Virus record (IMG/VR): IMGVR_UViG_3300027759_000045
Location: 1-64,000 of that record
Length of the DNA stretch: 64,000 bases
Strand: one strand, 5' to 3'
Shown here: one piece after another, positions 3,264 to 53,442 of the stretch
Numbering within the stretch: position 1 is the stretch's first letter
How the letters are laid out: each line of letters begins with the position of its first letter
Notes under the pieces: model-generated
The model's database searches: none
What the model was told of the DNA's origin: nothing
Seen by the model: the letters and a program-made list of their open reading frames with translations, nothing else
Position numbers and translations under genes: made by a program

Positions 3264-3339
3264 GCGCCTGTAGCTCAGGGGTCAGAGCAGGGGTCTCATA
3301 AACCCTTGGTCGTTGGTTCAAAACCAACCAGGCGCACCA
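3264..3339 (+). tRNA. tRNA with CAT anticodon (Ile2-like or elongator Met)
   Basis: Acceptor GCGCCTG/CAGGCGC, D arm TAGCTCAG..AGAGC, anticodon loop CTCATAA, GGTTCAA T-loop, encoded CCA. Confidence 0.92.
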
Positions 3340-5463: not shown

Positions 5464-5942
5464 GAACAGTATACCTAGACATGGATGATGTTGTTGCAGA
5501 CTTCAAAAGTTATGCTGTCAGTGTGCTTCGAAAGACAACCAACGAAGAACGCTGGGCACATGAGGAATGGACTAGACTACGTGACAATCCCAGACTGTAC
5601 CGAGACCTGGACAAGACAGCAGAAGCAGACCGCATTGTTGAAGCCTGCAGAGAAAAGTGCAAGACCAACAACTGGAACTTGATGTTCCTGACCGCAGTGC
5701 CCAAAGGCAATGATGTCAAGTGGGCATTTTATGACAAGGTAAATTGGGTTGCCACACACTATCCCGACATTCCGGTTATGTTTGGACCCTACAGTCATGA
5801 CAAGCATGTGCATTGTCTACCAGGAGATGTGCTGATTGATGACCGTACCAGCAACTGCGAAGAGTGGCGCAAGGCCGGAGGCGTTGCTATTCAGCATCGT
5901 GACAGTGTTGAAAACACACTGAGGGAAATTGCCGACCTATGA
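5460..5942 (+). CDS. HAD-family 5'(3')-deoxyribonucleotidase-like protein
   Basis: YLDMDDVVADF motif I; LIDDR motif IV. Confidence 0.75.
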   Translation: MRTVYLDMDDVVADFKSYAVSVLRKTTNEERWAHEEWTRLRDNPRLYRDLDKTAEADRIVEACREKCKTNNWNLMFLTAVPKGNDVKWAFYDKVNWVATHYPDIPVMFGPYSHDKHVHCLPGDVLIDDRTSNCEEWRKAGGVAIQHRDSVENTLREIADL

Positions 5943-6343
5943 CTCGAGTTGTTGTGAATGGTACATTTGACATCTTGCATGTGGGGCATCTACGATTGCT
6001 CCAGACAGCAAGGGCATACCCTGACTCATACGTGCTGGTACTGTTGGACACAGATCGACGCATTAAACAACTCAAAGGTGCCGATAGGCCTATACACAAC
6101 GAACTGGATCGTTGTACCATGATGTTTGCATTAAAGTCAGTTGACCGTGTAGAAACATTTGACAGCGACGAAGAACTGGCAAGATTAATTCGAGAATTTG
6201 ACCCCGATGTTATGGTCAAAGGCAGTGACTACAGAGACCAGCCAATCATTGGTTCTGAGTACTGCAAAAAAATACATTTTTACGATAGATACCGTGACTA
6301 CTCAACCACCAACACCATTAAGAATATTGCTAGTCGGAGATAA
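5939..6343 (+). CDS. Heptose-1-phosphate nucleotidyltransferase (HldC/RfaE domain II-like)
   Basis: NGTFDILHVGH, KGADRPI, VKGSDY, YSTT motifs. Confidence 0.8.
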   Translation: MTRVVVNGTFDILHVGHLRLLQTARAYPDSYVLVLLDTDRRIKQLKGADRPIHNELDRCTMMFALKSVDRVETFDSDEELARLIREFDPDVMVKGSDYRDQPIIGSEYCKKIHFYDRYRDYSTTNTIKNIASRR

Positions 6344-29075: not shown

Positions 29076-29468
29076 ATGAACAAAGCCGCATTTGCACCAT
29101 ATAAATTATCAGCTGACAGTCTCGAGCCATTGAGAGATGCAGTGATTGTGAGAGACATGTCGTTTGACATGCGTCAAACATCCGCGGGTATTGTGTTATT
29201 AAACGACAACGGAACAGGACTAGGTATCCGTCCACGCTGGGCACAGGTCTATGCGGTTGGCCCAGAGCAACAGGATGTTCGGCCCGGTGACTGGATCTGC
29301 GTGGCCCACGGTCGTTGGACACGTGGAATTGAAATTGACGACAACGGTACTGAACGCACCATCCGACGAGTTGATCCCGGTGACATTTTACTAGTGTCAG
29401 ATGAACAGCCGCAAGATGACACAATGAGCACAGCCGAACATGTGGAATCCAAGCATAGATTTGCATAA
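29076..29468 (+). CDS. groES: GroES-like co-chaperonin
   Basis: LEPLRDAVIV, TSAGIVL mobile loop, VYAVGP..V.PGD. Confidence 0.8.
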   Translation: MNKAAFAPYKLSADSLEPLRDAVIVRDMSFDMRQTSAGIVLLNDNGTGLGIRPRWAQVYAVGPEQQDVRPGDWICVAHGRWTRGIEIDDNGTERTIRRVDPGDILLVSDEQPQDDTMSTAEHVESKHRFA

Positions 29469-29947
29469 TGATTTTCAATCACATCAAAGAACTAAAAGCT
29501 CAAGGCAAAAAGATTGGTATCACTTTCAGTACCTTTGATATGTTGCATGCCGGGCATGTTGCTATGCTGAGTGAAGCAAAGAATCATTGTGATTATCTAA
29601 TCTGTGGACTGCAAACAGATCCCACAATCGATCGCCCCGACACCAAAAACAAACCTATTCAAAGTATTGTAGAACGTCAAATTCAATTGGCCGCTTGCCG
29701 TTATGTAGACGAAGTTGTTGTGTACCAAACTGAACAGGATCTAATTGACTTACTGTTAATTCTTCCTTTGGATGTGCGTATACTGGGTGTAGAATATCAA
29801 GACCAAGAGTTCACTGGAAGATACGAAGGCAGCGAACGAGGTATCGAACTGGTGTTTAACGGTCGCGATCATTCTTTTTCATCAAGCAGTCTCCGCAAAC
29901 GTGTGGCAGCTGCCGAAACATTTAAAGCATTAACTGCTCCAAACTAG
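29468..29947 (+). CDS. Cytidylyltransferase (TagD-like)
   Basis: TFDMLHAGH, SIVER, YVDEV, FSSSSLR. Confidence 0.85.
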   Translation: MIFNHIKELKAQGKKIGITFSTFDMLHAGHVAMLSEAKNHCDYLICGLQTDPTIDRPDTKNKPIQSIVERQIQLAACRYVDEVVVYQTEQDLIDLLLILPLDVRILGVEYQDQEFTGRYEGSERGIELVFNGRDHSFSSSSLRKRVAAAETFKALTAPN

Positions 29948-31198: not shown

Positions 31199-31903
31199 AT
31201 GAAATTTCATCAAACCGAATCATTTAAAAATTTAAACAATTATAAAGGCATGCGACTTAATTTTGAATTGTTGCTAATCTTTAAATTGATCAAATATTTT
31301 AAATTAAATAAAATTTTAGAGATAGGGTTTAGGCAAGGAAAATCATTTGGTGCAATGATAGAAGCCACTAATGATGTTGGTGATCTAACCGCAGTTGACA
31401 TTGTAATGGATCGAACATTGTATGATAAAATATATCATTGTAGTTCAATTATTAATAATAAAAAAATCAATTTAGTAACTATGCCAAGCTCAGACTTTGT
31501 TGACCATCCTGCCTCGTATGATTTTATCAATGTTGACGGTGATCACACCATGCCGCAGGTGCTAGATGATATAATTATGTCATCCAAACTGATCAAACAA
31601 AATGGTATAATTATGGTTGACGATTATAGAGTACCCGATGTTAACATAGCAATTGATAAGTTTTTAACATTGAATACTGATTTTGTTCCATTTTTAATAG
31701 ACGAACAGGCTATATTTTTTCATCATACATCACACAACGCTTCTGATTTTTTGGACATTGAATTGGAAAAGATATTTTCATCATTTGCTTCGTTGGACAA
31801 TATTACATATAAATCATTTATAGTTAAAAAAATCAAATGTTTACCAGCAGTAACAACACATGAGGATATCTTTTCATTAATCTGCCAACGCTACAATTTA
31901 TAG
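31199..31903 (+). CDS. Class I SAM methyltransferase (Methyltransf_24-like), AT-rich
   Basis: ILEIG...G.S, DFINVDGDH, GIIMVDDY. Confidence 0.8.
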   Translation: MKFHQTESFKNLNNYKGMRLNFELLLIFKLIKYFKLNKILEIGFRQGKSFGAMIEATNDVGDLTAVDIVMDRTLYDKIYHCSSIINNKKINLVTMPSSDFVDHPASYDFINVDGDHTMPQVLDDIIMSSKLIKQNGIIMVDDYRVPDVNIAIDKFLTLNTDFVPFLIDEQAIFFHHTSHNASDFLDIELEKIFSSFASLDNITYKSFIVKKIKCLPAVTTHEDIFSLICQRYNL

Positions 31904-31951: not shown

Positions 31952-32557
31952 ATGAAGAAATACAAAAATTTAGATAAAGTAATCTTAGCCGATTGTGATG
32001 GTGTGTTGTTAGATTGGGAATGGGCGTTTAATGTTTGGATGCAGGAACACGGATTTGAAGAAGTTCCGGGTAGTAAACTCAACTATGACATGTCAATGCG
32101 ATATGGCATACCCAAAGAGCAGGTTAAAAAATTAATACGCTTGTTCAACGAATCGGCCGCAATTGGCTTTTTGCCTGCACTGCGTGATGCCATGTACTAT
32201 GTTAAACGACTGCATGAAGAACACGGATTTAGATTTCACTGTATCACCAGTTTGAGTCTAGATCCCAATGCACAAAAACTTCGTGAAATGAATCTAAACA
32301 AACTGTTTGGAACATCGGCATTTGAACGTATTGTGTGCTTGGACACTGGAGCCGACAAAGATGAAGTGCTACAAGAATATGAAGGTACTGGGTGTTACTG
32401 GCTTGAAGACAAAATTGAAAATGCCGAAGCCGGATACCGCGCAGGATTAAGGAGCCTTCTGGTAGAGCACGGACATAACATGCACCACTACCATGAAGGC
32501 ATCACAACTGTTAAAAACTGGAAAGAAATTTACCAGTTAATAACTGATCAAGAGTAA
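31952..32557 (+). CDS. HAD-family nucleotidase-like protein
   Basis: LADCDGVLLDW; WLEDK..NA. Confidence 0.8.
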   Translation: MKKYKNLDKVILADCDGVLLDWEWAFNVWMQEHGFEEVPGSKLNYDMSMRYGIPKEQVKKLIRLFNESAAIGFLPALRDAMYYVKRLHEEHGFRFHCITSLSLDPNAQKLREMNLNKLFGTSAFERIVCLDTGADKDEVLQEYEGTGCYWLEDKIENAEAGYRAGLRSLLVEHGHNMHHYHEGITTVKNWKEIYQLITDQE

Positions 32558-34604: not shown

Positions 34605-35327
34605 ATGAATTTAAAAAGTTTTGGTTGCAGTTTTATCTTTGGCACGGAACTAAGTGACGATGGACAAAACAATCGATACGCCCGATACGTCCGAGACAAC
34701 GGCGTCTGGCGAGGTTGTCCTGTTGGCAGTCGACTAACATGGCCTGCACACCTGGCTACTCACCTTGGGTACAAATATCTAACTTATTCACGCCCTGGCA
34801 GCGGTAATCTGCAAATTGCAGAACGAGTGCTGTCACATTTGACCACCAATGAACAGGCATTTTTTGTGATTGGGTGGACATACATAGATCGGTTTGATTA
34901 CGTTGATGCTGCTACTTCCAATGGCTTCCCAGGTACACCATGGTCAACACTTATGCCAGTTGATACTACAGATATAGCAGCCGCATACTATAAAAACTTA
35001 CATTCTGAAATACGAGATAAACTAACAACACTTATGAGTATCCGATTGGTTATTGATGCACTTAAACAAAAAAGTTGCCCATTTATAATGACCTACATAG
35101 ATGATCTCATGTTTGATACTCAATGGAATACCTCTCCTGCAATTACAGATTTACAAGACTATATTCGTCCACACATGACCACATTCGAAGGATTAAACTT
35201 TCAGGCATGGAGCAAAAAGAATGGACACGCTATAACTGATATAGGGCATCCATTGGAATCAGCACATCGTGCCGCAGGCGAGTTAATGATCAAAGTTTTT
35301 GATACACAAAATACAATCGATCGTTAG
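34605..35327 (+). CDS. SGNH/GDSL-like protein
   Basis: FGCSF..G, WP, GSGN, GHP...AH. Confidence 0.55.
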   Translation: MNLKSFGCSFIFGTELSDDGQNNRYARYVRDNGVWRGCPVGSRLTWPAHLATHLGYKYLTYSRPGSGNLQIAERVLSHLTTNEQAFFVIGWTYIDRFDYVDAATSNGFPGTPWSTLMPVDTTDIAAAYYKNLHSEIRDKLTTLMSIRLVIDALKQKSCPFIMTYIDDLMFDTQWNTSPAITDLQDYIRPHMTTFEGLNFQAWSKKNGHAITDIGHPLESAHRAAGELMIKVFDTQNTIDR

Positions 35328-36015
35328 CGTCTTTCTTGAACGTTTCCAGTCGAAGATTATACTTTTCAGCAAAGTCGTTTACTACTTCAAATGTCCAGGG
35401 AAATATTTCCACATAAGGACCTGTGCGGTGTGTGATGCCTGGGTTAGCACGTAAAAAGAACTTGCCATCTGTTTTTAACAAATCTACACAATGACTGAAT
35501 CTAGCTTCAATTTCATCACGTGAGTTGAAGTTAATTGACCCCAGTGCCAAGATAACATCGTACTGATGTTTTACTCGGTACTCTAGAATGTCTACTTCAT
35601 AGTCTGCGCAGTTATTATATGGATCAATACCAACCAGATTTGTGATACGGCCTTTGAATGGATGGTATCCGCAACCAACATCTAGCACACGTTCTGGGTT
35701 CAGCTTGTTGATTTCTTCTACCAGTTCCCAGCCCGAATGTTCGTATTCGCCGGTTCTGGGTTTCCATATTTCGCCAAAGAACCGTAGTATGTAACGCTCA
35801 TTAAGATCATCCACAATACTTCTTACGGTACCTACATAATCGCAGGATAGACTTAGTTCTGCTTCCACAGCGTCCTTGAACTTGCGATAACGTGCAGGTG
35901 TCCAAGGCAGGGCCTGTACCTGAGTATCTGCATCAATTGTGATATCGGCGTACTTGGGCAGGCTAAAAGAGTCCTGCAAATTTTTGCAGATTAGGTTAAA
36001 AATTTTGGTGTTCAT
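35290..36015 (-). CDS. Class I SAM methyltransferase with small helical N-terminal domain
   Basis: VLDVGCG, GIDP, YDVILALGSINF. Confidence 0.75.
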   Translation of the reverse strand: MNTKIFNLICKNLQDSFSLPKYADITIDADTQVQALPWTPARYRKFKDAVEAELSLSCDYVGTVRSIVDDLNERYILRFFGEIWKPRTGEYEHSGWELVEEINKLNPERVLDVGCGYHPFKGRITNLVGIDPYNNCADYEVDILEYRVKHQYDVILALGSINFNSRDEIEARFSHCVDLLKTDGKFFLRANPGITHRTGPYVEIFPWTFEVVNDFAEKYNLRLETFKKDANDRLYFVYQKL

Positions 36016-36107
36016 AGAAAAATTTAATAAATAAAGTAGAATTTTTAACAAACCAGCAAATTATTTGCCAGGCGTTTAAAAATCAAGCATACTATTTAAG
36101 GAACTAT

Positions 36108-37085
36108 ATGTCAATCAAAAAATTATTTGCTGTGCTATTATTAGCACCTGCCCTGGCGTTTGCTTGGGAACCCACAAAGCCTGTCACTGTGTATATTGGT
36201 AACACACCCGGTGCTGGCAATGAAATGGCCTTTCGGAAACTGGCTGATATTGTACAAAAATCCAACCCTAAATTTGTTTATGTTGTGCAGAACATACCCG
36301 GTGCTGATAGTGTCATTGCCAACAACCGGTTTTTGGAAGTGGCCAATGATGGCTACACCATCAACTTGCCCAGCCATATGTCAAGCTATGTGACAAATGA
36401 TATCTGGGAAAAGTCGATTAAAAAGTACAACTACGACAGCTTCGTGGATGTGTTGACCATGGGCAAAAGCCCACTGGTATTAGTTGCCAGTCCTCGAAGC
36501 GGCATTAACACTCCGCAGGAGTTTGCAAAGTATATTCAATCAGGTAGAACAATCAACATTGCCATTGGTGGTGGCGCACATCGCACAGCGTTTGAATACT
36601 TGATGGACAAAGGTCGTGGCAACAAAGACACTGTAAAACCGATCAAATTCAATGGTCCAATGCCAGCAGTGACCAGTGCCGCAAGCTATGACGGCAAAAC
36701 AGGCACAGAATTTGCCATCATACCTATTGCAGTGGCCAAAGCACTAGTAGATGCTGGTAAGGTCAAACCAATTGGATTCACTGGCACACAGAAAATGTCG
36801 CAGTTTCCCACGGTTCCATTGCTTAATACAATAGCACCAGGCATCAATGTATATGCGGCCTGGTCAATTCAATTGCCGCCTGGCACAGATCGAGAAATTG
36901 TTGCCTGGTATCAACAACAATTTAGTCGTGCAGTTCGTTCAGCAGAATACAAAGAGTACACGGATGCCAATGTTATATTCTACGTGGAAGATGAATTAAC
37001 TCCTGCAGGGCTAAAGCGTCACATGGACGATTTAAGAGCTGCCTTTATTCCTGTACTGAGTCGAATTGATTTAAATAAAGAATGA
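36108..37085 (+). CDS. Bug/TctC-family periplasmic solute-binding protein
   Basis: Signal peptide, P.KPV, NIPGA, DGYT, PLVLV, P.VP, W...LPPGT. Confidence 0.85.
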   Translation: MSIKKLFAVLLLAPALAFAWEPTKPVTVYIGNTPGAGNEMAFRKLADIVQKSNPKFVYVVQNIPGADSVIANNRFLEVANDGYTINLPSHMSSYVTNDIWEKSIKKYNYDSFVDVLTMGKSPLVLVASPRSGINTPQEFAKYIQSGRTINIAIGGGAHRTAFEYLMDKGRGNKDTVKPIKFNGPMPAVTSAASYDGKTGTEFAIIPIAVAKALVDAGKVKPIGFTGTQKMSQFPTVPLLNTIAPGINVYAAWSIQLPPGTDREIVAWYQQQFSRAVRSAEYKEYTDANVIFYVEDELTPAGLKRHMDDLRAAFIPVLSRIDLNKE

Positions 37086-37708
37086 AATATATCTTTGTGG
37101 CCGGTGCTCCGGGCTCAAAATGGAGCAGTGTAGTTAAAAATATCTACTACAGTCCTGACATTGATCGGTCAGACTACAGAGATGAATGGACTTATTATCA
37201 CGATGCGTCTGGCACTCGCGAACTCATGCACCTGGGTGCGTATTTTGATCCGGGCATGGCCTCTGCATTGCCCGAGGATTTGACCACACTGACTAGATCT
37301 GAATTAGAAAAAATCTTTGCTGAACCATTTAAATTCAAAGAATCTCATAGCACACGAATTATCAAAAGTCATGTGTTCTCAACGCATCTTGAGTATCTGC
37401 GAGAACAGTTTCCGGAGTCGCCCATTGTGTTGGTGCATCGCCCAGACGATGCTTGCCTGGGCTGGTGGGTCAAGTGCGGGCACTTTGACATAACATATCC
37501 CTCCTATGACATATATTATAAAAACTTAAAGACTATGGCCACGATAATTAAACAACAGAATGTGGGAATTGTCAATGCTTCATTAAAGTACCCAGGACAA
37601 CATCCGTTGACCAATCAACAGTTGGCACGAATGCTGGGTATAGCAGTACCGCCAAAGGAGTATGAACAAAGCTATGGCGCAAGCGACATAAGGGTAACAG
37701 TAATATGA
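37082..37708 (+). CDS. Sulfotransferase-like P-loop protein
   Basis: FVAGAPGSKWSS, IIKSH, VLVHR. Confidence 0.5.
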   Translation: MKYIFVAGAPGSKWSSVVKNIYYSPDIDRSDYRDEWTYYHDASGTRELMHLGAYFDPGMASALPEDLTTLTRSELEKIFAEPFKFKESHSTRIIKSHVFSTHLEYLREQFPESPIVLVHRPDDACLGWWVKCGHFDITYPSYDIYYKNLKTMATIIKQQNVGIVNASLKYPGQHPLTNQQLARMLGIAVPPKEYEQSYGASDIRVTVI

Positions 37709-38367
37709 TAACAGAAGAATTTAAAAGCAGTTGGGATTTTACCAAGAGCCGCAGTACATATCACTTTGATAGTACTGTAAAAGATGCACCGGAATCTGTG
37801 CTCACACACTTAGGGCACATTGAGCCTACTTGGCAAGCAGACATAGCAGACATTGTCAATCATTCTACACCAGCCACCTGGGAAACACGTGGCTACAAAG
37901 GAGAAGGCGTGCTGCCACCACGTGAAGATTTGCTTGCTGAAGAGTACGATGTCTCTCGTGTGGGTGCTGATCCCAAAATGATCATTACACACTTGAACTG
38001 GCAGATACCAGATTCACTGAAAGCAATTACTGCGGCATTTGGACTAGATGACTGTATGGAACGCATACACATACAACAGCCAGGCGAAGTGTGGAATCTG
38101 CACATGGACAAACTGCAAAAATGGTCGCCTGAAGATCCCAGTCGTGTGGGCCGGTACTTTGTTCAACTAACAGACTGGCAACCTGGACAGTTCTGGGAGT
38201 ACGGCAACTATCACTGGAATCAATGGTCAGCAGGAGATGTATCAACTTTTGACTGGGCAAACATACCACACAGCACTGCCAATGCTGGCCATCATCCTCG
38301 GGTGACATTTCAATTAACTGGTGTTATTACAGATCAGACTCGCCGCTTCCTAGCATCTCTACAATGA
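37705..38367 (+). CDS. 2OG-Fe(II)/Asp-hydroxylase-like double-stranded beta-helix oxygenase
   Basis: QQPG...LHMD, PHSTAN.G..PR..FQ. Confidence 0.7.
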   Translation: MITEEFKSSWDFTKSRSTYHFDSTVKDAPESVLTHLGHIEPTWQADIADIVNHSTPATWETRGYKGEGVLPPREDLLAEEYDVSRVGADPKMIITHLNWQIPDSLKAITAAFGLDDCMERIHIQQPGEVWNLHMDKLQKWSPEDPSRVGRYFVQLTDWQPGQFWEYGNYHWNQWSAGDVSTFDWANIPHSTANAGHHPRVTFQLTGVITDQTRRFLASLQ

Positions 38368-38588
38368 ACAAGTATCATGTTAGATTCAACACCAAGCACA
38401 ACGGCAGTGAGTTAGTGTGGCGCATCTTTGAAAATGGTCAGGAGCATCTAGCCTCTGATGTTCGCATCATTGGAGAAACCTACACCGAATGCACAAACGA
38501 ACACGGCGAAACAAAATGGAACATTGCTTGTGAAGGTCGAATGGTCTGGGTTGATCAAGTTGCTGTAATTGTCACAGACAAAGACTAA
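38364..38588 (+). CDS. Hypothetical protein
   Basis: 74 aa coupled ORF. Confidence 0.6.
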   Translation: MNKYHVRFNTKHNGSELVWRIFENGQEHLASDVRIIGETYTECTNEHGETKWNIACEGRMVWVDQVAVIVTDKD

Positions 38589-38622
38589 CAATGAAAAAAC
38601 ACTTTTAAAAAGAATTGGATAG

Positions 38623-39408
38623 ATGACTAATTGGGCACTGCAATATTCCGGCGGATCTGGTGGATTTCTATTGTTACATCTTTTGTTATTGTCGGACAAG
38701 TTTTACACTGCATTTGACAGAAATATACCACTGGCCCAACTAATTCAAGAACACTGGAATATAAAATCTCCTGATCAATGGAAAAGCACTGAAATATGGC
38801 CAGATGCTCAAATCACACTAGACGCCCGGGTTGATTTTGATAAAATCTATTTTCAATGCAATCCATTTGAATACGATTACAACACTGTCTTGAAAGAATT
38901 AGTTTATAAAAAAATTGTTATCTATACAGATTACCAAAGCCAATTGTTATTAGCTCATTATAAAAAAGCAAATTGGTATATTAGTGTCCCTGGGCAAGAT
39001 TTAAAATATATTAAATTTAAAAAAGTTTTAAACAACTGGAAAGACCATTACGCCAATATAAAAGATCCATTGTGGCCAAAATGTCTCAGTGTCAGACATA
39101 TCGATCGTCTACCTGAGAATATACAAAAAGAAATATTAGCAGATCCGTATACTGAATATTTTTTAAATCTTACATATCAGGATCCTAGTGCGTATTTTAA
39201 CAATGAACTGGTGCATGAACCTATGATACCCTATTTAGAATCAGCCGATGTGGCTGTTAAATTGCAAGATTTAGTTAACAGCAATGGAAAAATTTTAGAA
39301 ACATTGTTCGACATACCTAAAATTAATAATAAACAACTGTTGTTGTTAAAAAAATGGAAACAACATCATACCAATGAGTTATTAATCAGCATAGGAATAA
39401 CCCCATAA
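38623..39408 (+). CDS. Sulfotransferase-like/P-loop protein (AT-rich) with DPxWP module
   Basis: YSGGSGGFLL N-terminal loop; YANIKDPLWPKC..LPE.I..EI. Confidence 0.45.
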   Translation: MTNWALQYSGGSGGFLLLHLLLLSDKFYTAFDRNIPLAQLIQEHWNIKSPDQWKSTEIWPDAQITLDARVDFDKIYFQCNPFEYDYNTVLKELVYKKIVIYTDYQSQLLLAHYKKANWYISVPGQDLKYIKFKKVLNNWKDHYANIKDPLWPKCLSVRHIDRLPENIQKEILADPYTEYFLNLTYQDPSAYFNNELVHEPMIPYLESADVAVKLQDLVNSNGKILETLFDIPKINNKQLLLLKKWKQHHTNELLISIGITP

Positions 39409-39421
39409 TACTTTTAATAAA

Positions 39422-40051
39422 ATGTCAAAAACACTTTTAATTTTAACAGGCCCACAGGGATCTGGCAATCATTTATGGAGTAAAATATTTGCACAGCACC
39501 CTGATGTGTACGGATGGCATGCACTGTTGCATGAATACTGGATAGGGCATGATCAAGAGCCCTTTGCTGAATACTGGGAAAATCCTGATTTACTCAAAGA
39601 CTTTGACTGGAGCCGCTGTGATTACTTTGTCACCAGTGTCAGCACACCTTACATGTTCAATGGTGAACGCACAGTACCCGACATTGTGCGTTTTGCTGCC
39701 ACTGCCATGGGCCTGGGTATCTGTGTAAAAATTGCTGTGATTGGACGAGATTGCAACATACTAAACTATCAACAAACTCGTGTGCGCGGCGAGCCCACTG
39801 TTGATATTGCACTTGCTGAATACAAAAAACTACGCACTTGGGATCCGGTATTTTTAAGTTATGAATTATTGCACTTGTACCGAGAAGATTACCTGCGTCA
39901 GATTGCAAAGCAGTTGGAATTCCCAATGGATTTTACGCATCCGCAGTTAACAAATATTCTAGTAGATGATACCAACAGTAAATACTTTCACCCTGTGGCG
40001 CATCATGCCACAGATGATCTAGCACAACATGCTTCAAGGCAATGGCGATAA
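39422..40051 (+). CDS. Sulfotransferase-like P-loop protein
   Basis: ILTGPQGSGNHLW, VIGRD, FLSYE.L. Confidence 0.55.
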   Translation: MSKTLLILTGPQGSGNHLWSKIFAQHPDVYGWHALLHEYWIGHDQEPFAEYWENPDLLKDFDWSRCDYFVTSVSTPYMFNGERTVPDIVRFAATAMGLGICVKIAVIGRDCNILNYQQTRVRGEPTVDIALAEYKKLRTWDPVFLSYELLHLYREDYLRQIAKQLEFPMDFTHPQLTNILVDDTNSKYFHPVAHHATDDLAQHASRQWR

Positions 40052-40890
40052 TTCACCCAATTTTTCTGTCAGAATTATATTTGTCTACTTATGCTGATAC
40101 ACATTGGCACAACTCTGGTCTGGACAGTCCAGAGTTGTGTTCAAATCGTCAACATTATTTTTCATACCCGCATAAAGTTGAGTATTGTTATAATAGTCGA
40201 GGCTTCAGAGATGCAGAATGGCCTGATGATCTAGCCGATGTAATATGGTGCGTCGGCGATAGCTTCACAGTGGGACTGGGAAGTCCGCGTGAACACACAT
40301 GGCCTTATATACTACAGCAACGCTTGGGTCGGCGCACAATAAATCTCAGCCTGGATGGAGCAAGCAATAATTGGATTGCCAGGATTGGATCTGCCATCCT
40401 AGCGGAATTCCCCAATGCGGTTATTGTGACCCAATGGAGTTTCCTACACAGAAGAGAGTTATCTGTGGAAGCATCGTTAAAAAAAGGATTCCCAGAGTTT
40501 TATAAAGCAGTAGCAGATCACAGTTGGCCGCTGTGCAATAATTTAGATGATTTCAAAGAATTACCCGAATGGATAAAACAAGAAATAAAACAACTGCACA
40601 ATTGGCCAGACTGCCTGACTACTAGTGAAAAGAGACGGGCATATTATATAAATTCCACAACCGAAGAGGATGTTGTTAATACTCAATTCTGCATACAACA
40701 ACTTCAAGGCAATGTTGTGCATTCTGCTATTCCAAATTGGGCACCACCCGGAATTGATTTAAACTATGATAATATAATATTAACCAAGCAGTTGGATCGT
40801 GCTCGCGACGACTTTCATTATGACATTCTTACTAGCAATTCCTTAATAGATCAAATTATTCCAGCCTTGGCATCGAATGCCAGGTACTAA
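40042..40890 (+). CDS. SGNH-like protein with DxxWP module
   Basis: YNSRGFRD, GDSFT.G, NLS.DGASN, ARDDFHY. Confidence 0.55.
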   Translation: MAIIHPIFLSELYLSTYADTHWHNSGLDSPELCSNRQHYFSYPHKVEYCYNSRGFRDAEWPDDLADVIWCVGDSFTVGLGSPREHTWPYILQQRLGRRTINLSLDGASNNWIARIGSAILAEFPNAVIVTQWSFLHRRELSVEASLKKGFPEFYKAVADHSWPLCNNLDDFKELPEWIKQEIKQLHNWPDCLTTSEKRRAYYINSTTEEDVVNTQFCIQQLQGNVVHSAIPNWAPPGIDLNYDNIILTKQLDRARDDFHYDILTSNSLIDQIIPALASNARY

Positions 40891-41983
40891 TTTCATCCAG
40901 TGCAATTTTCTTGATATCAGCATCTGTATAAAGATTGCCTACTCCGCTTTGCTTGACCCAGTTATTGTATGCTTCTGCGCATTGATCAAAGTTGCGTATT
41001 AGTCGGCGTTTTTCCATCATGGTTTGCAATTTAATGGGAACACCTGTGACCATTATTTTATGCTGAACTAACTCATTGATTGCTTTGTAACTGTCAATAT
41101 ACTTGCCGGTATGGTGTTGTAAAAACTGTTTATCACCGGCGCTTAGACTATTGAGAATTGCATTTCTAGTCAACACAGGTGCTAGATCTACACTGTCCAG
41201 CTGGTCCGTAGAGTCGAACGTGATTTTTAAGTTGTCAGGCGCAGGCAACTGCGCACTTATACCGCTTATGTCGCTGGCAAGATAATGACATCGATTCCAG
41301 TCTTGAAATTCAATGCCAAATGTGTCATGCCAGGATTTTGTTTGTTGTCCACCAAATATATCTAAACCTAATATATACTCTTCAATTTTAAGCATGTGTG
41401 TTTCGTATTCAAAATAGGAACTTACAGTAAAATGATCATTGACCCACTGTAAATAATTAACATACTTGTTAAGATATGACAGCATTACATTTACATCAAC
41501 GGTAATTCTATTTTGATATATGCCAGCAAATGCATCGATCTTTTCTTGGTGCGTATAAACATTTAACTTTTTTGAATGTCCTTGAATACACCAACTCAGT
41601 GCGTGTTCTAGTAGATTTTTTCGTTGAGCACTGATTATAAAAAAGTTATCGTTTAGGTATTGATAAAACGGTACTTGATTGGCCAATGAATCTTGTCGAT
41701 TCACAATGTGATAATGTGCCAATCGTGCTGTCTTATAGTGATCTGTACTGTGCAAGTGTTCAATTATTTCATTGAGTGTTTGATAATATCCCCAAGGGCG
41801 GTCAGTTGGTTTACCCAGCACTTCTTGATTGAACACAGGACTGTAGTATTTCATTAGCCCGTTTGTGAGTTCATGCAAATTGATTACAGGGCGATCGTAC
41901 GTGTGCGATTGCATGTACACTGTGATCAGACGTTGCAATAGTGTGCTGCCAACTCGGTCCGGGGTTAAAATTAATACATTCAT
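40856..41983 (-). CDS. Sulfotransferase-like (Stf0-like) protein
   Basis: LTPDRVGSTLL PAPS-loop-like motif; R.NLLEHALSW. Confidence 0.6.
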   Translation of the reverse strand: MNVLILTPDRVGSTLLQRLITVYMQSHTYDRPVINLHELTNGLMKYYSPVFNQEVLGKPTDRPWGYYQTLNEIIEHLHSTDHYKTARLAHYHIVNRQDSLANQVPFYQYLNDNFFIISAQRKNLLEHALSWCIQGHSKKLNVYTHQEKIDAFAGIYQNRITVDVNVMLSYLNKYVNYLQWVNDHFTVSSYFEYETHMLKIEEYILGLDIFGGQQTKSWHDTFGIEFQDWNRCHYLASDISGISAQLPAPDNLKITFDSTDQLDSVDLAPVLTRNAILNSLSAGDKQFLQHHTGKYIDSYKAINELVQHKIMVTGVPIKLQTMMEKRRLIRNFDQCAEAYNNWVKQSGVGNLYTDADIKKIALDEISTWHSMPRLE

Positions 41984-41988
41984 GCAAT

Positions 41989-42001
41989 TACTTAGTAAAT
42001 A
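41989..42001. promoter_or_regulatory. Back-to-back late-type boxes (TAAGTA minus, TAAATA plus)
   Basis: Each lies 5 nt from its ATG. Confidence 0.6.
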
Positions 42002-42006
42002 GCACT

Positions 42007-42801
42007 ATGACACAACGTATTTTAATCATGGGCTTACCAGGAGCCGGCAAAACATATCTGGCACAACACATTGTAGATCACTTACAAGCAGAAAAGAAAC
42101 GGGTAGGTTGGCTCAACGCTGACGATGTACGTAAAAAGTACAACGACTGGGACTTTAGCGAAGCAGGCCGTATTCGACAAAGTCTACGTATGAGAGAACT
42201 GGCAGACACAATGGCCGATGTTGATTATGTGATCTGCGACTTTGTTGCTCCATTGGTTGAGATGCGCAACAACTTCAAAGCAGACTGGACTGTGTGGGTT
42301 GATACCATTGACAAAGGTAGATACGAAGACACTAACCGGGCATTTGTTCCTCCTGAACAGTATGATTTTAGAATCACAGAACAGCACAGTGAGAAATGGG
42401 GCGAGTTTATTGCCGCGCATATCTTAGACAACCGTCGTAGACCGGTGTTTGACTGGCAAAAGGAAACTGTTGAACAACTTGGCAGATGGCAACCTTGGCA
42501 TGCAGGTCACCGTGCGTTGTTTGACAGACTGATACAAAAAACAGGGCAAGTATGCATTATGATTCGTGATTGTCAAGGATGGCAAGGTTCAAATCCATTT
42601 GCAATTGATCAGGTCAAAAACGCTATCAAACGAGATTTAGACATGATGTATCAAGGTCAATACGAAATACTGGTAGTTCCTAATATTACTCATATTGGAT
42701 ACGGTCGCGGAGTAGGCTACACAATGGCAGAAGAAAAATTCGACGAATCTATTACAAACATATCCGGGACAGAGATCCGCAAAAGCCTGGGATTAAAGTA
42801 A
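42007..42801 (+). CDS. Adenylylsulfate-kinase-like domain fused to an HxGH nucleotidyltransferase domain
   Basis: MGLPGAGKT, LNAD.VR..DFS..GR, FVAP..MR; GRWQPWHAGH, THIGYGR, ISGTEIR. Confidence 0.75.
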   Translation: MTQRILIMGLPGAGKTYLAQHIVDHLQAEKKRVGWLNADDVRKKYNDWDFSEAGRIRQSLRMRELADTMADVDYVICDFVAPLVEMRNNFKADWTVWVDTIDKGRYEDTNRAFVPPEQYDFRITEQHSEKWGEFIAAHILDNRRRPVFDWQKETVEQLGRWQPWHAGHRALFDRLIQKTGQVCIMIRDCQGWQGSNPFAIDQVKNAIKRDLDMMYQGQYEILVVPNITHIGYGRGVGYTMAEEKFDESITNISGTEIRKSLGLK

Positions 42802-52686: not shown

Positions 52687-53442
52687 ATGAATTATCTAGT
52701 AATTTACCCAGGACGTTTTCACCCATTCCACAAAGGTCACAAGGCCAGTTATGATTGGCTGAACAAACAGTTTAGCAACGACAGTGTTTTTATTGCCACC
52801 AGTGGTGTACAAGCACCTGTTACAAGTCCGTTCAGTTATTCCGACAAAGTAATGATGATGACCAAACTGGGCATTCCTGCTGGTCGCATTGTCAACGTAA
52901 AAAATCCATATCAAGCTGTTGAAATTACCAGTGCTGTTCCCGATGAAGAAAAGGCCAACACAGTATTGGTGTTTGCTGTGAGTGCTAAAGATGCAGAACG
53001 TTTTAATTTTGCTCCTAAAAAAGATGGCACCCCTGGGTATCTACAACCATTGCCTAAAAATAAAAAGTCAATAAAGCCCATGACCAAACATGGCTACGTT
53101 GTGATCACTCCCACTATCAACTTTCGAGTAAATGGCGTAGATGCCAACTCTGCATCCGAAATACGCAAAATGTATCTCAAAGGCAACGACCGTGACAAAG
53201 ATCAAGTGATTGCTGATTTATATGGTCAACCAGATTTGGCAATTCGCGCAGTGTTTGATAAGAAATTGGGCATTTCGGAACAGGCCCAAAACTATATTCG
53301 CGAAGCCAGGCAATTTGGCAATGTCAAGGTTGTGGAATGGCTGGAGAATGTGTTACAATTAGAAAAACAAGTAAACAGCGTCCACGCTGATTTCGCACAC
53401 ATCAACCCTGATTACATAGACGAAAAAACATATAATCGATAA
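52687..53442 (+). CDS. HxGH cytidyltransferase-like protein
   Basis: YPGRFHPFHKGH, SPF, SASEIR. Confidence 0.75.
   Translation: MNYLVIYPGRFHPFHKGHKASYDWLNKQFSNDSVFIATSGVQAPVTSPFSYSDKVMMMTKLGIPAGRIVNVKNPYQAVEITSAVPDEEKANTVLVFAVSAKDAERFNFAPKKDGTPGYLQPLPKNKKSIKPMTKHGYVVITPTINFRVNGVDANSASEIRKMYLKGNDRDKDQVIADLYGQPDLAIRAVFDKKLGISEQAQNYIREARQFGNVKVVEWLENVLQLEKQVNSVHADFAHINPDYIDEKTYNR

What the first reader, a model, noticed from the sequence alone, without database searches (positions are those of the whole stretch)
34605..42801. Putative phage-encoded sulfation/tailoring island
Seen: eleven contiguous genes, including four with sulfotransferase-like N-terminal loops (GAPGSKWS, GGSGG, GPQGSGN, PDRVGST), an APS-kinase fusion, two SGNH-like proteins, a SAM methyltransferase, a 2OG-Fe(II)-like oxygenase and a Bug/TctC binding protein, with late-type boxes. 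Established: sulfotransferases need PAPS, which APS kinase makes. Inference: a self-contained pathway that hydroxylates, methylates, acylates and sulfates a glycan, lipid, virion protein or DNA base. I know of no described phage system like it.
Basis: partly seen in the sequence, partly recalled or inferred. Interest (0 to 1): 0.75.

Follow-up and report, generated by a model that had tools for sequence, protein, structure and literature searches.

The report
Phage sulfation and tailoring gene island
An uncultured 347-kb lake phage carries a conserved block of genes (a secreted binding protein, a hydroxylase, two to three sulfotransferases, two esterases, a methyltransferase and an APS-kinase fusion) that probably hydroxylates and sulfates a still unknown target; similar enzyme sets were predicted in bacteria in 2010, but none has been studied in a phage.

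Summary
The eleven genes are real. All are long ORFs conserved in dozens of related 340-350 kb freshwater phage contigs, with dN/dS of 0.08-0.2.

**Confirmed:**
- TctC-family secreted binding protein (g03).
- Sulfotransfer_3-like enzyme (g04).
- 2OG/Fe(II) oxygenase by fold and HxD..H..R motif (g05).
- Sulfotransferase by fold (g08).
- Two SGNH enzymes with intact S-G-N-H residues (g01, g09).
- Class-I methyltransferase, on weak evidence (g02).
- APS-kinase-family domain fused to an NMNAT-like nucleotidyltransferase (g11).

**Tentative:** g10 as a Stf0-like sulfotransferase.

**Not supported:** g07 as a sulfotransferase, and the 'late-type boxes'.

The invariant core is MTase | TctC-ST-oxygenase. 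The other genes form a variable shell.

Best reading: a hydroxylate-then-sulfate tailoring module using PAPS, like the bacterial beta-hydroxylase/sulfotransferase/methyltransferase/PAPS-synthetase neighbourhoods of Iyer et al. 2010. The acceptor is unknown.

It is not shown to be self-contained. No recognisable ATP sulfurylase is present. Full-length g11 homologues also occur in small phages in which no sulfotransferase was detected, so its PAPS role is uncertain.

Verdict: a new phage variant of a known kind, of moderate interest.

The parts
34605..35327 (+). g01, 240 aa: SGNH-type hydrolase/acyltransferase. Variable shell, present in 19 of 39 long loci.
   Evidence: There is no Pfam hit. In 19 family members, including a paralogue at genome 255536-256261, S9, G65, N68 and H215 are invariant. 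dN/dS is 0.15.
35290..36051 (-). g02, about 241-253 aa: class-I SAM methyltransferase, transcribed divergently from g03. Invariant core.
   Evidence: Methyltransf_23 E 0.002, with a VLDVGCG motif. Present in 39 of 39 long loci. dN/dS is 0.08.
36108..37085 (+). g03, 325 aa: secreted TctC/Bug-family solute-binding protein. Invariant core, first gene of the operon.
   Evidence: PF03401 E 4.7e-19. Signal peptide MSIKKLFAVLLLAPALAFA|WEP, and the paralogues also carry signal peptides. Present in 37 of 39 loci. Its stop overlaps the g04 start. Identical contigs occur in a lake metatranscriptome.
37082..37708 (+). g04, 208 aa: Sulfotransfer_3-like sulfotransferase. Invariant core.
   Evidence: PF13469 E 3.8e-4 and 8e-5 in the genome search. 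PF13469 is precomputed on 17 of the 120 listed clusters. The N-terminal loop GAPGSKWSS, K95-x-H97 and R120 are invariant. There are 3704 homologues in metagenomes. The protein was not folded.
37705..38367 (+). g05, 220 aa: 2-oxoglutarate/Fe(II) dioxygenase, close to the Asp/Asn and Pro hydroxylase group. Invariant core.
   Evidence: AlphaFold model with pLDDT 78. All 50 top VIA matches are 2OG oxygenases, Z up to 10.9. H133-x-D135, H189 and R199 are invariant. By shape it matches bacterial ST + Asp_Arg_Hydrox fusion proteins, TM 0.56.
38364..38588 (+). g06, 74 aa: small soluble protein of unknown function. Variable, present in 5 of 39 loci.
   Evidence: No family hit. Conserved at 86-94% identity where present.
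38623..39408 (+). g07, 261 aa: unknown function. It has an N-terminal GGSGGF loop and an inserted ~40-aa 'WP' mini-domain at aa 140-185. Variable, present in 7 of 39 loci.
   Evidence: No Pfam hit. No profile-profile link to g08 or g10. There is a paralogue at genome 275409-276323.
39422..40051 (+). g08, 209 aa: sulfotransferase-fold enzyme nearest to TPST, OLS-ST, Stf9 and NodH. Its P-loop lacks the Walker lysine. Present in 29 of 39 loci.
   Evidence: Model with pLDDT 88.5. The 11 best of 48,161 chains are all sulfotransferases, Z 12.0-9.1, and kinases begin at Z 9.0. All named Atlas shape matches are sulfotransferase families. Language-model hits also point to sulfotransferases. There is no sequence-level hit.
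40042..40890 (+). g09, 282 aa: SGNH/GDSL hydrolase carrying the 'WP' mini-domain at aa 151-196. Present in 16 of 39 loci.
   Evidence: Lipase_GDSL_2 E 4.6e-5. NCBIfam SGNH LA_2486 E 0.0018. S74, G106, N109, D256 and H259 are invariant.
40856..41983 (-). g10, 375 aa: possible Stf0-like sulfotransferase in the N-terminal ~240 aa, plus a C-terminal extension. Present in 15 of 39 loci.
   Evidence: Language-model similarity to Stf0/Sulfotransfer_3 clusters, 0.94-0.95. One distant homologue hits PF13469 at E 0.0015. G12, S13, R87, R96 and R121 are conserved. Pfam, PDB and hhalign gave no support. The protein was not folded.
42007..42801 (+). g11, 264 aa (the ORF is open from GTG 41941): an APS-kinase-family P-loop domain (aa 1-~150) fused to an HxGH/ISxTxIR nucleotidyltransferase domain (aa ~150-264).
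   Evidence: APS_kinase E 1.5e-11. The PDB profile search gives APS kinases at E 3e-9 and NMNAT at 6.6e-5 for the C-terminus; see also NCBIfam. The start was set from the orthologues. Present in 27 of 39 loci and in 5 of 5 near-complete relatives.

Best explanation
**What the island is.** It is a clade-conserved enzyme set that decorates one acceptor by hydroxylation followed by O-sulfation, with methylation and acyl-ester editing as side steps.

**Shown.**
- The invariant core is a methyltransferase gene (g02) facing an operon with overlapping stop and start codons: secreted TctC-family binding protein (g03), then a Sulfotransfer_3-like enzyme (g04), then a 2OG/Fe(II) dioxygenase (g05).
- A variable shell surrounds the core. 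It holds a second sulfotransferase-fold enzyme (g08), a possible third (g10), two SGNH enzymes with intact catalytic residues (g01, g09), and an APS-kinase-family / nucleotidyltransferase fusion (g11).

**Inferred.**
- g05 installs a hydroxyl group on the acceptor.
- g04, and in some phages g08 and g10, transfer sulfate from PAPS to hydroxyl groups.
- g02 methylates other positions, and g01 and g09 add or remove acyl esters.
- g11 phosphorylates APS made by the host's CysDN to raise PAPS. Many bacteria keep PAPS low or bypass it.

**The acceptor.** My best guess is a macromolecule assembled in the cytoplasm during infection: a protein, or a protein- or lipid-linked glycan, of the virion or the host envelope. 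This follows the bacterial beta-hydroxylase / sulfotransferase / methyltransferase / PAPS-synthetase neighbourhoods. The role of the secreted TctC protein in this model is unexplained. It may import a carboxylate such as citrate or 2-oxoglutarate that feeds the phage's many 2OG oxygenases, or it may import the acceptor itself (see rival 1).
For: **The genes are real and under selection.**

**Core linkage.** TctC, ST4, the oxygenase and the MTase occur in 70-81 of 81 loci, and they stay together even where the flanks differ completely.

**Enzyme assignments.**
- g04: Sulfotransfer_3 hits and invariant K-x-H and R residues.
- g08: sulfotransferase fold ranking above kinases.
- g05: 2OG oxygenase fold with an intact iron and 2OG triad.
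- g01 and g09: SGNH residues invariant.

**Hydroxylase-sulfotransferase coupling.**
- A bacterial protein cluster fuses Sulfotransfer_3 with Asp_Arg_Hydrox, and its hydroxylase part matches the g05 model.
- Iyer et al. 2010 described bacterial operons with a beta-hydroxylase, sulfotransferase, methyltransferase and PAPS synthetase. They predicted hydroxylation followed by sulfation.

**g11.**
- It belongs to the APS-kinase family.
- It is present in 5 of 5 near-complete relatives.
- A 63%-identical copy in an unrelated T4-like contig lies among a canonical sulfotransferase, methyltransferases, a 2OG oxygenase and two GT2 glycosyltransferases.

**Expression.** A lake metatranscriptome holds identical contigs over g03-g05 but none over the next 3 kb.
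Against: - No acceptor is identified. The genome has no collagen-like repeats and no tail-collar domain, which were the substrates predicted for the bacterial systems.
- g04 was not folded, and its family hit is below Pfam's threshold.
- g10 rests on language-model similarity only, and g07 has no assignment.
- g11 carries N-A-D where APS kinases have D-G-D. The significance of that change rests on my own knowledge of the motif.
- Full-length g11 homologues occur in Sano/Salvo/Bacata-type siphophages that gave no Sulfotransfer_3 match, next to COG3236/NADAR and MazG genes. g11 may therefore serve nucleotide or NAD metabolism instead.
- No ATP sulfurylase, CysD or CysH was found in the genome.
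- The shell genes vary from phage to phage. This also fits a hotspot of independent accessory genes.
- A periplasmic binding protein does not fit a purely cytoplasmic macromolecule-tailoring model.
- The metatranscriptome depth is low, and DNA carry-over cannot be excluded.
Confidence: 0.5

Rival explanations
1. Small-molecule pathway. The secreted TctC protein captures an external carboxylate, which the host's TctAB imports. In the cytoplasm g05 hydroxylates it, g04 sulfates it and g02 methylates it. This would be a viral secondary-metabolite, signal or detoxification pathway. The shell enzymes would extend or vary the chemistry.
For: - Operons that start with a binding protein normally act on the imported ligand.
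- TctC, ST and oxygenase are translationally coupled and co-occur in about 80 loci.
- Relatives carry further signal-peptide TctC paralogues, each paired with another cytoplasmic enzyme: cluster c33, about 397 aa, with an SxGxDS PP-loop-like motif seen by eye.
- The best single structural match of g05 is free-L-proline 3-hydroxylase, Z 10.9.
- The core is the part found in the metatranscriptome.
Against: - No TctA or TctB is present in the phage, and the host is unknown.
- Structural neighbours of g05 and g08 include as many protein-modifying enzymes (prolyl hydroxylases, AspH, TPST) as small-molecule ones.
- There is no precedent for such a phage pathway.
- The benefit to a lytic phage is unclear.
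Confidence: 0.22
2. Not one pathway. The region between the replication genes and the lysis cassette is a hotspot where unrelated accessory genes pile up. TctC would be a nutrient-uptake auxiliary gene. g11 would work in nucleotide or NAD-type metabolism, as in Sano-like phages. The sulfotransferases, SGNH enzymes and methyltransferase would each have separate targets.
For: - Only four genes are invariant. g01, g06, g07, g09 and g10 are present in 5-19 of 39 loci, and gene order differs between relatives.
- Relatives insert unrelated genes here, such as a Peptidase_C26 and a ferritin-like protein.
- g11 lies up to about 80 kb from the core in relatives. It also occurs in phages that gave no Sulfotransfer_3 match, beside NADAR and MazG genes.
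- Similar tailoring genes (SGNH, hydroxylases, methyltransferases, radical SAM) are scattered over the whole genome.
Against: - The four-gene core is kept together in very different genomic contexts.
- ST + hydroxylase fusions exist in bacteria.
- g11 sits among a sulfotransferase, methyltransferases and an oxygenase in a second, unrelated phage lineage.
- g11 is present in every near-complete relative that has g04.
Confidence: 0.23
3. The island modifies phage DNA or nucleotide precursors, for example by hydroxylating and sulfating a base, to evade restriction.
For: - The island lies next to replication genes (clamp loader, PhoH, a 5'-nucleotidase-like gene).
- 2OG oxygenases include nucleic-acid modifiers (AlkB-type hits at Z 8-10).
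- Some relatives have TGT-like and QueC-like motifs close to the core, seen by eye only.
Against: - No DNA-binding or glycosylase-type domain was found in the island.
- Sulfated DNA bases are unknown (own knowledge).
- The nearest neighbours of g05 and g08 are amino-acid, protein and glycan enzymes rather than Tet/JBP or AlkB.
- The TctC and SGNH proteins do not fit.
Confidence: 0.04

Closest known systems
Bacterial gene neighbourhoods of beta-hydroxylase-family 2OG oxygenase + sulfotransferase + methyltransferase (+ PAPS synthetase, acetyltransferase), Iyer, Abhiman, de Souza and Aravind 2010 (PMC2938197)
   Same: The enzyme logic is the same: an Asp/Asn/Pro-hydroxylase-type dioxygenase, a P-loop sulfotransferase, a methyltransferase and a PAPS-making enzyme encoded together. 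The predicted order of reactions is hydroxylation and then sulfation. A fused ST + hydroxylase cluster in bacteria matches g05 by shape.
   Different: - Those systems are bacterial and purely predicted.
- Their proposed substrates, collagen-like peptides and tail-collar proteins, are absent here.
- Here the set sits in a lytic-type jumbo phage and includes a secreted TctC protein and SGNH enzymes.
- It has an APS-kinase/nucleotidyltransferase fusion instead of a recognisable PAPS synthetase.
NodH/NodPQ (Nod-factor sulfation), RaxST/RaxPQ (peptide tyrosine sulfation) and Stf0 (trehalose sulfation)
   Same: All pair a PAPS-dependent sulfotransferase with a dedicated PAPS supply. The g08 model aligns with NodH (TM 0.51) and with TPST-type enzymes at Z 12. 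g10 resembles Stf0 clusters by language-model features.
   Different: - There is no sequence-level membership.
- No ATP sulfurylase partner such as NodP/CysD or NodQ/CysN is present.
- The acceptors are unknown.
Orphan sulfotransferase and cysC 'auxiliary metabolic genes' reported in phage genomes (Synechococcus phage S-SRM01, OM43 phage genomes; cysC in aquatic viruses)
   Same: Phage-borne Sulfotransfer_3-type genes and APS kinase genes are already on record. phiRSL1 has an annotated APS kinase.
   Different: - These are reported as single genes with 'function unclear'.
- Here several are clustered with a hydroxylase, a methyltransferase, SGNH enzymes and a binding protein, with a conserved 4-gene core across a large clade.
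Animal PAPS synthase (PAPSS1/2) and Aquifex SAT/APS kinase: fused ATP sulfurylase + APS kinase
   Same: g11 has an N-terminal APS-kinase-family domain. It is followed by an HxxH-type nucleotidyltransferase domain with an ISxTxxR-like motif, the same order as in PAPSS (the domain order in PAPSS is from own knowledge).
   Different: - The C-terminal domain is only about 115 aa.
- It matches NMNAT (E 6.6e-5) and not ATP sulfurylase.
- PF01747 finds nothing in the genome.
'Kinase' gp35 of Xylella phage Sano and its relatives (Salvo, Bacata, Suzuki, DLP_6)
   Same: These are full-length homologues of g11, 36-39% identical over 98-100% of the query, so they have the same two-domain architecture.
   Different: - They sit in 56-kb siphophages in which no Sulfotransfer_3 match was found.
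- Their neighbours are COG3236/NADAR, a MazG-like pyrophosphatase and a cupin annotated as 'cysteine dioxygenase'.
- Their function is untested.

Membership tests
PAPS-dependent sulfotransferase (P-loop sulfotransferase fold; Pfam clan including Sulfotransfer_1/3, Stf0): g04 | Significant match to a sulfotransferase family model | tested here: inconclusive
   PF13469 gives E 3.8e-4 at 21.2 bits, below the 27-bit cut-off, and E 8e-5 in the single-genome search. 17 of the 120 listed clusters carry precomputed PF13469. A PDB profile search found nothing.
PAPS-dependent sulfotransferase: g04 | 5'-phosphosulfate-binding loop at the N-terminus, a catalytic base (His in a K-x-H context) and a 3'-phosphate-binding Arg | tested here: met
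   GAPGSKWSS (aa 8-16), K95, H97 and R120 are invariant in 25 sequences. Mapping them onto SULT motifs rests on my own knowledge, not on a structural superposition.
PAPS-dependent sulfotransferase: g08 | Sulfotransferase fold distinguishable from P-loop kinases | tested here: met
   Model pLDDT is 88.5. Ranks 1-11 of 48,161 chains are sulfotransferases, Z 12.0-9.1 with 158-173 residues aligned. The best kinase reaches Z 9.0 with 134 aligned. All named Atlas shape hits are sulfotransferase families.
PAPS-dependent sulfotransferase: g08 | Basic residue (Lys or Arg) in the PSB loop, and PAPS binding | tested here: inconclusive
   The loop reads GPQGSGNH, with Q where most sulfotransferases have K or R, and it has no Walker GK[ST]. 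R109, R120 and R122 are invariant. Cofactor binding cannot be tested with these tools.
Stf0-type sulfotransferase (PF09037): g10 | Match to the family by sequence or fold | tested here: inconclusive
   Language-model hits to Stf0 and Sulfotransfer_3 clusters score 0.94-0.95. One distant homologue hits PF13469 at E 0.0015. Pfam on 13 members, a 42-sequence profile against PDB, hhalign and PF09037 on the genome gave nothing. The PF09037 control also rang nowhere. The protein was not folded.
Sulfotransferase: g07 | Any sequence or profile similarity to sulfotransferases | tested here: not met
   No Pfam, PHROG or NCBIfam hit. hhalign against the g08 and g10 profiles gave probability below 1%. The fold was not tested.
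APS kinase (CysC; PF01583): g11 N-terminal domain | Family-level sequence match above the curated threshold | tested here: met
   PF01583 scores 45 bits against a cut-off of 21.1, E 1.5e-11. Solved APS kinases are the best PDB profile hits, 2yvu at E 3.3e-9. All NCBIfam scores are below the equivalog cut-offs.
APS kinase: g11 N-terminal domain | Signature residues: P-loop, L-D-G-D, F-S..R and S-P motifs | tested here: inconclusive
   The P-loop GLPGAGKT, D39, R42, F50, S51 and R55 are conserved. However, the domain has L-N-A-D instead of L-D-G-D and A-P instead of S-P, and only model positions 5-94 of 152 are matched.
ATP sulfurylase (PF01747): g11 C-terminal domain | Match to the ATP-sulfurylase catalytic domain | tested here: not met
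   PF01747 finds nothing in the genome at E <= 1. The best solved relatives are NMNATs, 2qjt at 6.6e-5 and 1f9a at 0.031. Only the generic HxGH and ISxTxIR motifs are shared.
SGNH/GDSL hydrolase: g01 and g09 | The four invariant residues Ser (block I), Gly (II), Asn (III) and His (V) | tested here: met
   g09: S74, G106, N109 and H259 (plus D256) are invariant, with Lipase_GDSL_2 at E 4.6e-5. g01: S9, G65, N68 and H215 are invariant in 19 sequences, but no Pfam hit.
2OG/Fe(II)-dependent dioxygenase (double-stranded beta-helix): g05 | DSBH fold with an HxD/E...H iron triad and a basic 2OG-binding residue | tested here: met
   The model has pLDDT 78 and pTM 0.79. All top 50 VIA hits are 2OG oxygenases. 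H133, D135, H189 and R199 are invariant. There is no Pfam hit in 25 members.
TctC/Bug extracytoplasmic solute receptor: g03 | PF03401 match above threshold plus an export signal | tested here: met
   The score is 69.4 bits against a cut-off of 27. A signal peptide is present. No cognate TctA was found in the phage.
Class I SAM-dependent methyltransferase: g02 | Rossmann-type SAM-binding motif I and a family match | tested here: inconclusive
   Methyltransf_23 gives E 0.002 at 18 bits, below the cut-off. The motif VLDVGCG is present. The fold was not tested.

The most novel reading that the evidence does not exclude
A large clade of freshwater jumbo phages runs its own sulfation chemistry. A secreted TctC receptor brings in a carboxylate. 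The phage hydroxylates, O-sulfates and methylates it, or uses the same enzymes on its virion or the host envelope. PAPS comes from a miniature PAPS synthase in which an NMNAT-like ~115-aa nucleotidyltransferase has taken over the ATP-sulfurylase step beside an APS-kinase domain. That would be a new viral metabolic capability and a new, minimal type of sulfate-activating enzyme.
Probability: 0.15. Interest if true: 0.85.

Novelty: new variant of a known kind. Interest (0 to 1): 0.55.

Why it matters
Sulfotransferase genes have been noted in phage genomes, but the papers read here call their role unclear. I found no report of a tested function.

This island offers a tractable case:
- It has a 4-gene core of binding protein, sulfotransferase, hydroxylase and methyltransferase.
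- The g04 sulfotransferase has thousands of metagenomic homologues (3704), on lake phage contigs that include near-complete 340-350 kb genomes.
- The core region is represented in a lake metatranscriptome.

If the enzymes sulfate virion or host-envelope components, that would be a new way for phages to tune adsorption, superinfection exclusion or particle stability in fresh water. If they make a sulfated small molecule, it would be viral secondary metabolism.

The g08 family, which the ESM Atlas records as a cluster of about 9,900 almost purely viral proteins without annotation, can now be called sulfotransferase-fold.

The g11 fusion, also present in cultured Xylella, Stenotrophomonas and Xanthomonas phages, is an easily testable candidate for a compact PAPS-related enzyme.

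Tried and rejected
**DNA and sequence searches that found nothing**
- Near-identity DNA search of the island against deposited phages: no match.
- PHROGs on ten island proteins: no hit.
- PDB sequence-profile searches for g04, g08 and g10: nothing useful.
- Profile-profile comparisons among g04, g07, g08 and g10: no significant link. The sulfotransferase-like proteins are therefore not recent paralogues.
- Pfam on all members of the g05, g08 and g10 alignments: nothing.
- An exhaustive HMMER search with the g10 profile found only 261 relatives. Ten distant ones gave one marginal PF13469 hit.
- tblastn of g05 and g08 against deposited phages: no match.

**Regulatory signals**
- The promoter and terminator scan was at chance level.
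- The T4 late box TATAAATA is absent near the island.

**Sulfur-activation genes and predicted substrates**
- ATP sulfurylase and PAPS_reduct/CysD: absent.
- Collagen-like repeats and tail-collar domains, the substrates predicted for the bacterial analogue: absent.

**Complex prediction**
- The g04 + g05 job gave 'no answer'. It is evidence neither for nor against binding.

**Host inference**
- A 79%-identical TctC lies on a contig binned into a Haliscomenobacter MAG. That MAG holds two or three phage-like contigs and no TctA.
- Several island genes have Shine-Dalgarno-like sequences.
- The host remains open.

**Corrections and limits**
- I first took g06 for a DUF2061 protein. That was a different 69-aa gene in a relative, and the idea was dropped.
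- The 'stand-alone' ~110-125-aa nucleotidyltransferase proteins proved, in the two contigs checked, to be mis-called or split pieces of the fused gene.
- Only two structure predictions were allowed, so g04, g07, g10 and g11 were not folded.

Full report
**Setting.** The window is the first 64 kb of a single 346,856-bp IMG/VR virus record with direct terminal repeats, rated 100% complete.
- The gene content is that of a jumbo myovirus. It includes a baseplate-wedge/tail-fibre connector, tail-fibre-like proteins, a clamp loader, PhoH and a ClpA-like ATPase. The ClpA-like ATPase is 36-40% identical to those of PA5oct, Phosso, SCTP-2 and XaC1-type jumbo phages.
- No deposited phage matches the island at the DNA level.
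- Public runs that hold the sequence are freshwater and lake metagenomes.

**The observation.** Eleven ORFs fill 34605-42801 without large gaps. Nine lie on the + strand and two (g02, g10) on the - strand.
- The quoted N-terminal motifs are there.
- g04 alone has 3704 homologues in public metagenomes, many on contigs of 340-352 kb.
- 81 related IMG/VR loci were fetched.
- In the 39 loci with at least 18 kb, g02 was found in 39, g03 in 37, g04 in 39 and g05 in 39. The rest were found less often: g08 in 29, g11 in 27, g01 in 19, g09 in 16, g10 in 15, g07 in 7 and g06 in 5.
- Pairwise dN/dS against relatives is 0.08-0.20 for all genes tested. These are real genes under purifying selection.
- Gene-order maps show that the block MTase(-) | TctC, ST, oxygenase(+) is kept even where the flanks are entirely different, while the remaining genes come and go.
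- g03/g04, g04/g05 and g05/g06 overlap by 4 bases. This is typical of one operon.

**What each gene is.**
- **g03** is a TctC/Bug-family binding protein (69 bits, E 4.7e-19) with a clear signal peptide. Relatives carry one to three such paralogues, all with signal peptides.
- **g04** gives a sub-threshold Sulfotransfer_3 match over residues 52-130.
  - 17 of the 120 listed clusters carry the same Pfam flag.
  - Its alignment keeps an N-terminal GAPGSKWSS loop, K95-x-H97 and R120 invariant.
  - From my own knowledge of cytosolic sulfotransferases, these correspond to the 5'-phosphosulfate loop, the catalytic Lys/His and the 3'-phosphate Arg.
- **g05** has no Pfam hit, but its model (pLDDT 78) is a double-stranded beta-helix.
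  - The 50 best of 48,161 solved chains are all 2OG oxygenases, led by proline 3-hydroxylase, prolyl hydroxylases, PiuC, proline 4-hydroxylase and viral collagen prolyl hydroxylase, with AspH lower down.
  - H133-x-D135, H189 and R199 are invariant.
- **g08** has no sequence-level hit, but its model (pLDDT 88.5) is a sulfotransferase.
  - Ranks 1-11 are TPST1/2, the olefin-synthase sulfotransferase domain, Stf9, NDST, 3-OST5 and Stf1 (Z 12.0-9.1).
  - P-loop kinases start at Z 9.0 with about 30 fewer aligned residues.
  - All named Atlas shape matches are sulfotransferase families.
- Its loop GPQGSGNH lacks a Walker lysine.
- **g10** is only tentatively a sulfotransferase. It has language-model similarity to Stf0 and Sulfotransfer_3 clusters and one marginal Pfam hit in a distant homologue. 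Nothing came from Pfam, PDB or hhalign even with a 42-sequence profile.
- **g07** has no support as a sulfotransferase.
- **g09 and g01** keep all four SGNH signature residues invariant.
- **g02** is a weak class-I methyltransferase match with a VLDVGCG motif.
- **g06** is unassigned.

**The APS-kinase fusion.** Orthologues show that g11 starts at ATG 42007, MTQRILIMGLPGAGKT.
- The first ~90 residues match APS kinases above Pfam's threshold. Solved APS kinases are the best PDB hits, at E 3e-9.
- F-S..R and D..R are conserved, but L-N-A-D replaces L-D-G-D.
- Residues ~150-264 form an HxGH / ISxTxIR nucleotidyltransferase whose best solved relatives are NMNATs (6.6e-5).
- Source annotations of its homologues vary between PPAT, NMNAT, cytidylyltransferase and even 'ATP sulfurylase'.
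- The apparently stand-alone copies turned out, in the two contigs checked, to be mis-called or split pieces of the fusion.
- The genome has no ATP sulfurylase and no CysD or CysH. If g11 makes PAPS, it needs host APS, unless the small nucleotidyltransferase domain adenylylates sulfate. That is an attractive idea without evidence.

Two findings on g11 pull in opposite directions:
- **For a link to sulfation.** g11 is present in 5 of 5 near-complete relatives. A 63%-identical copy in an unrelated T4-like contig lies among a canonical Sulfotransfer_1/3 gene, two methyltransferases, a 2OG oxygenase and two GT2 glycosyltransferases, next to neck genes.
- **Against it.** Full-length homologues (36-39% identity) are single 'kinase' genes in 56-kb Sano/Salvo/Bacata-type siphophages. 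Those phages gave no Sulfotransfer_3 match. There the gene sits beside COG3236/NADAR, a MazG-like pyrophosphatase and a cupin.

**How it probably works.** The strongest functional link is between g05 and g04.
- They are adjacent, translationally coupled and co-inherited.
- A bacterial protein cluster fuses Sulfotransfer_3 with an Asp/Asn-hydroxylase domain that matches the g05 model (TM 0.56).
- Iyer et al. 2010 described bacterial neighbourhoods combining beta-hydroxylase-family oxygenases, sulfotransferases, methyltransferases and PAPS synthetases. [quoted passage not shown]

I therefore read the core as a hydroxylate-then-sulfate (and methylate) module. The variable shell adds further sulfation and acyl-ester chemistry.

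**The acceptor is not identified.**
- **For a protein or glycan target:**
  - the TPST-like and prolyl/aspartyl-hydroxylase-like neighbours;
  - the glycosyltransferase-rich context of the g11 homologue in L104;
  - the SGNH enzymes;
  - the many other protein-modifying-type enzymes in this genome: three Asp_Arg_Hydrox genes, a g05 paralogue, two radical-SAM enzymes (one with a SPASM domain) and further methyltransferases.
- **Against the specific published substrates:** the genome has no collagen-like repeats and no tail-collar domain.
- **For a small-molecule target:** the operon begins with a secreted solute receptor, and relatives pair further TctC paralogues with other cytoplasmic enzymes.
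- I cannot decide between these readings with the tools at hand.

**Expression.** In one lake metatranscriptome run, contigs identical to the window cover g03, g04 and the start of g05 (36.3-38.0 kb). None covers the following 3 kb, although DNA runs cover the whole stretch. This suggests that the core operon is transcribed in nature. The depth is low and DNA carry-over cannot be excluded.

**Novelty.**
- Single sulfotransferase genes and cysC are on record in phages, with 'function unclear'.
- The enzyme logic was predicted for bacteria.
- What is new here:
  - the phage setting;
  - the tight core that includes a secreted TctC receptor;
  - the scale of the clade;
  - the fold-level assignment of the large, unannotated viral g08 family to sulfotransferases;
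  - the g11 fusion as a candidate compact PAPS-related enzyme.
- I rate it a new variant of a known kind, of moderate interest. The open acceptor and the uncertain role of g11 are the main gaps.

Noticed in passing
window 39040-39177 (g07 aa 140-185) and 40492-40629 (g09 aa 151-196); genome 108058-108915(-), 275409-276323(+), 292122-292940(+): A ~40-aa mini-domain with the pattern Y..[IV].D..WP.C....DF..LP..I..E[CI] is inserted in five otherwise unrelated proteins of this genome: an SGNH enzyme, g07 and its paralogue, an Asp/Asn-hydroxylase-family protein and an unknown protein. In g07 relatives it is absent or sits at another position. It could be a shared docking or substrate-recognition module. 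No family was found for it.
   Followed up: partly
genome 68844-69566(+), 108058-108915(-), 120721-121458(+), 325463-325978(+): There are three further genes with above-threshold Asp_Arg_Hydrox (PF05118) matches and a truncated paralogue of g05. The phage therefore carries at least five cupin/2OG-type hydroxylases.
   Followed up: partly
genome 248000-267000 (locus L112): A second stretch rich in tailoring genes is interleaved with core genes (large terminase, gp32-like, UvsX/RecA-like). It holds two radical-SAM enzymes (one with a SPASM domain), two SGNH paralogues of g01 and g09, three methyltransferases, a GT2-like gene and a cytidylyltransferase-like gene.
   Followed up: partly
window 5939-6343, 29468-29947, 52687-53442; genome 266156-266911(-): Four more small CTP_transf_like (HxGH) nucleotidyltransferase genes score above threshold, three of them in this window. 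That is unusually many for one phage.
   Followed up: no
loci L025, L039, L062, L064 (e.g. L039:12838-13719 and the next gene): Relatives carry second and third signal-peptide TctC paralogues, each followed by a ~397-aa protein (cluster c33) with an SxGxDS PP-loop-like motif seen by eye. It has no Pfam hit.
   Followed up: partly
loci L007, L028, L033, L040, L064 between the MTase and TctC/ST genes: Some relatives insert a Peptidase_C26/GATase-like gene (E 1e-17) and a ~232-aa protein with two ExxH motifs (ferritin-like/di-iron by eye) into the core.
   Followed up: partly
locus L104 (NCBI GCA_010031135.1 contig RHBH01000016.1, labelled 'bacterium'): This is a T4-like phage contig. It carries a 3158-aa RCC1-repeat protein, a canonical sulfotransferase, an RfbT-like and other methyltransferases, a g11 homologue, a 2OG oxygenase and two GT2 glycosyltransferases, directly upstream of gp13/gp14/gp15 neck genes. 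The g11 homologue is annotated only as a 127-aa 'cytidyltransferase' because a TTG start was missed.
   Followed up: partly
locus L083 and G001 contigs C49, C36, C90: A 6.9-Mb MAG labelled Haliscomenobacter sp. contains two or three contigs that carry the phage's TctC-ST core (79% and 57/53% identity). These are probably phage contigs binned with a bacterium. That is at most a weak host hint, and several island genes have Shine-Dalgarno-like sequences.
   Followed up: partly
window 41941-42006: The 286-aa GTG ORF of g11 overlaps the start of g10 on the other strand. Orthologues begin at the ATG 22 codons downstream (42007), which removes the overlap.
   Followed up: yes
window 31199-31903 and 31952-32557: Just upstream of the island lie a Methyltransf_24/O-methyltransferase-like gene (E 5e-11) and a weak 5'-nucleotidase (NT5C-like) gene. 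They were not examined for linkage with the island.
   Followed up: no
window 3264-3339: A single tRNA-Met (CAT) gene.
   Followed up: no
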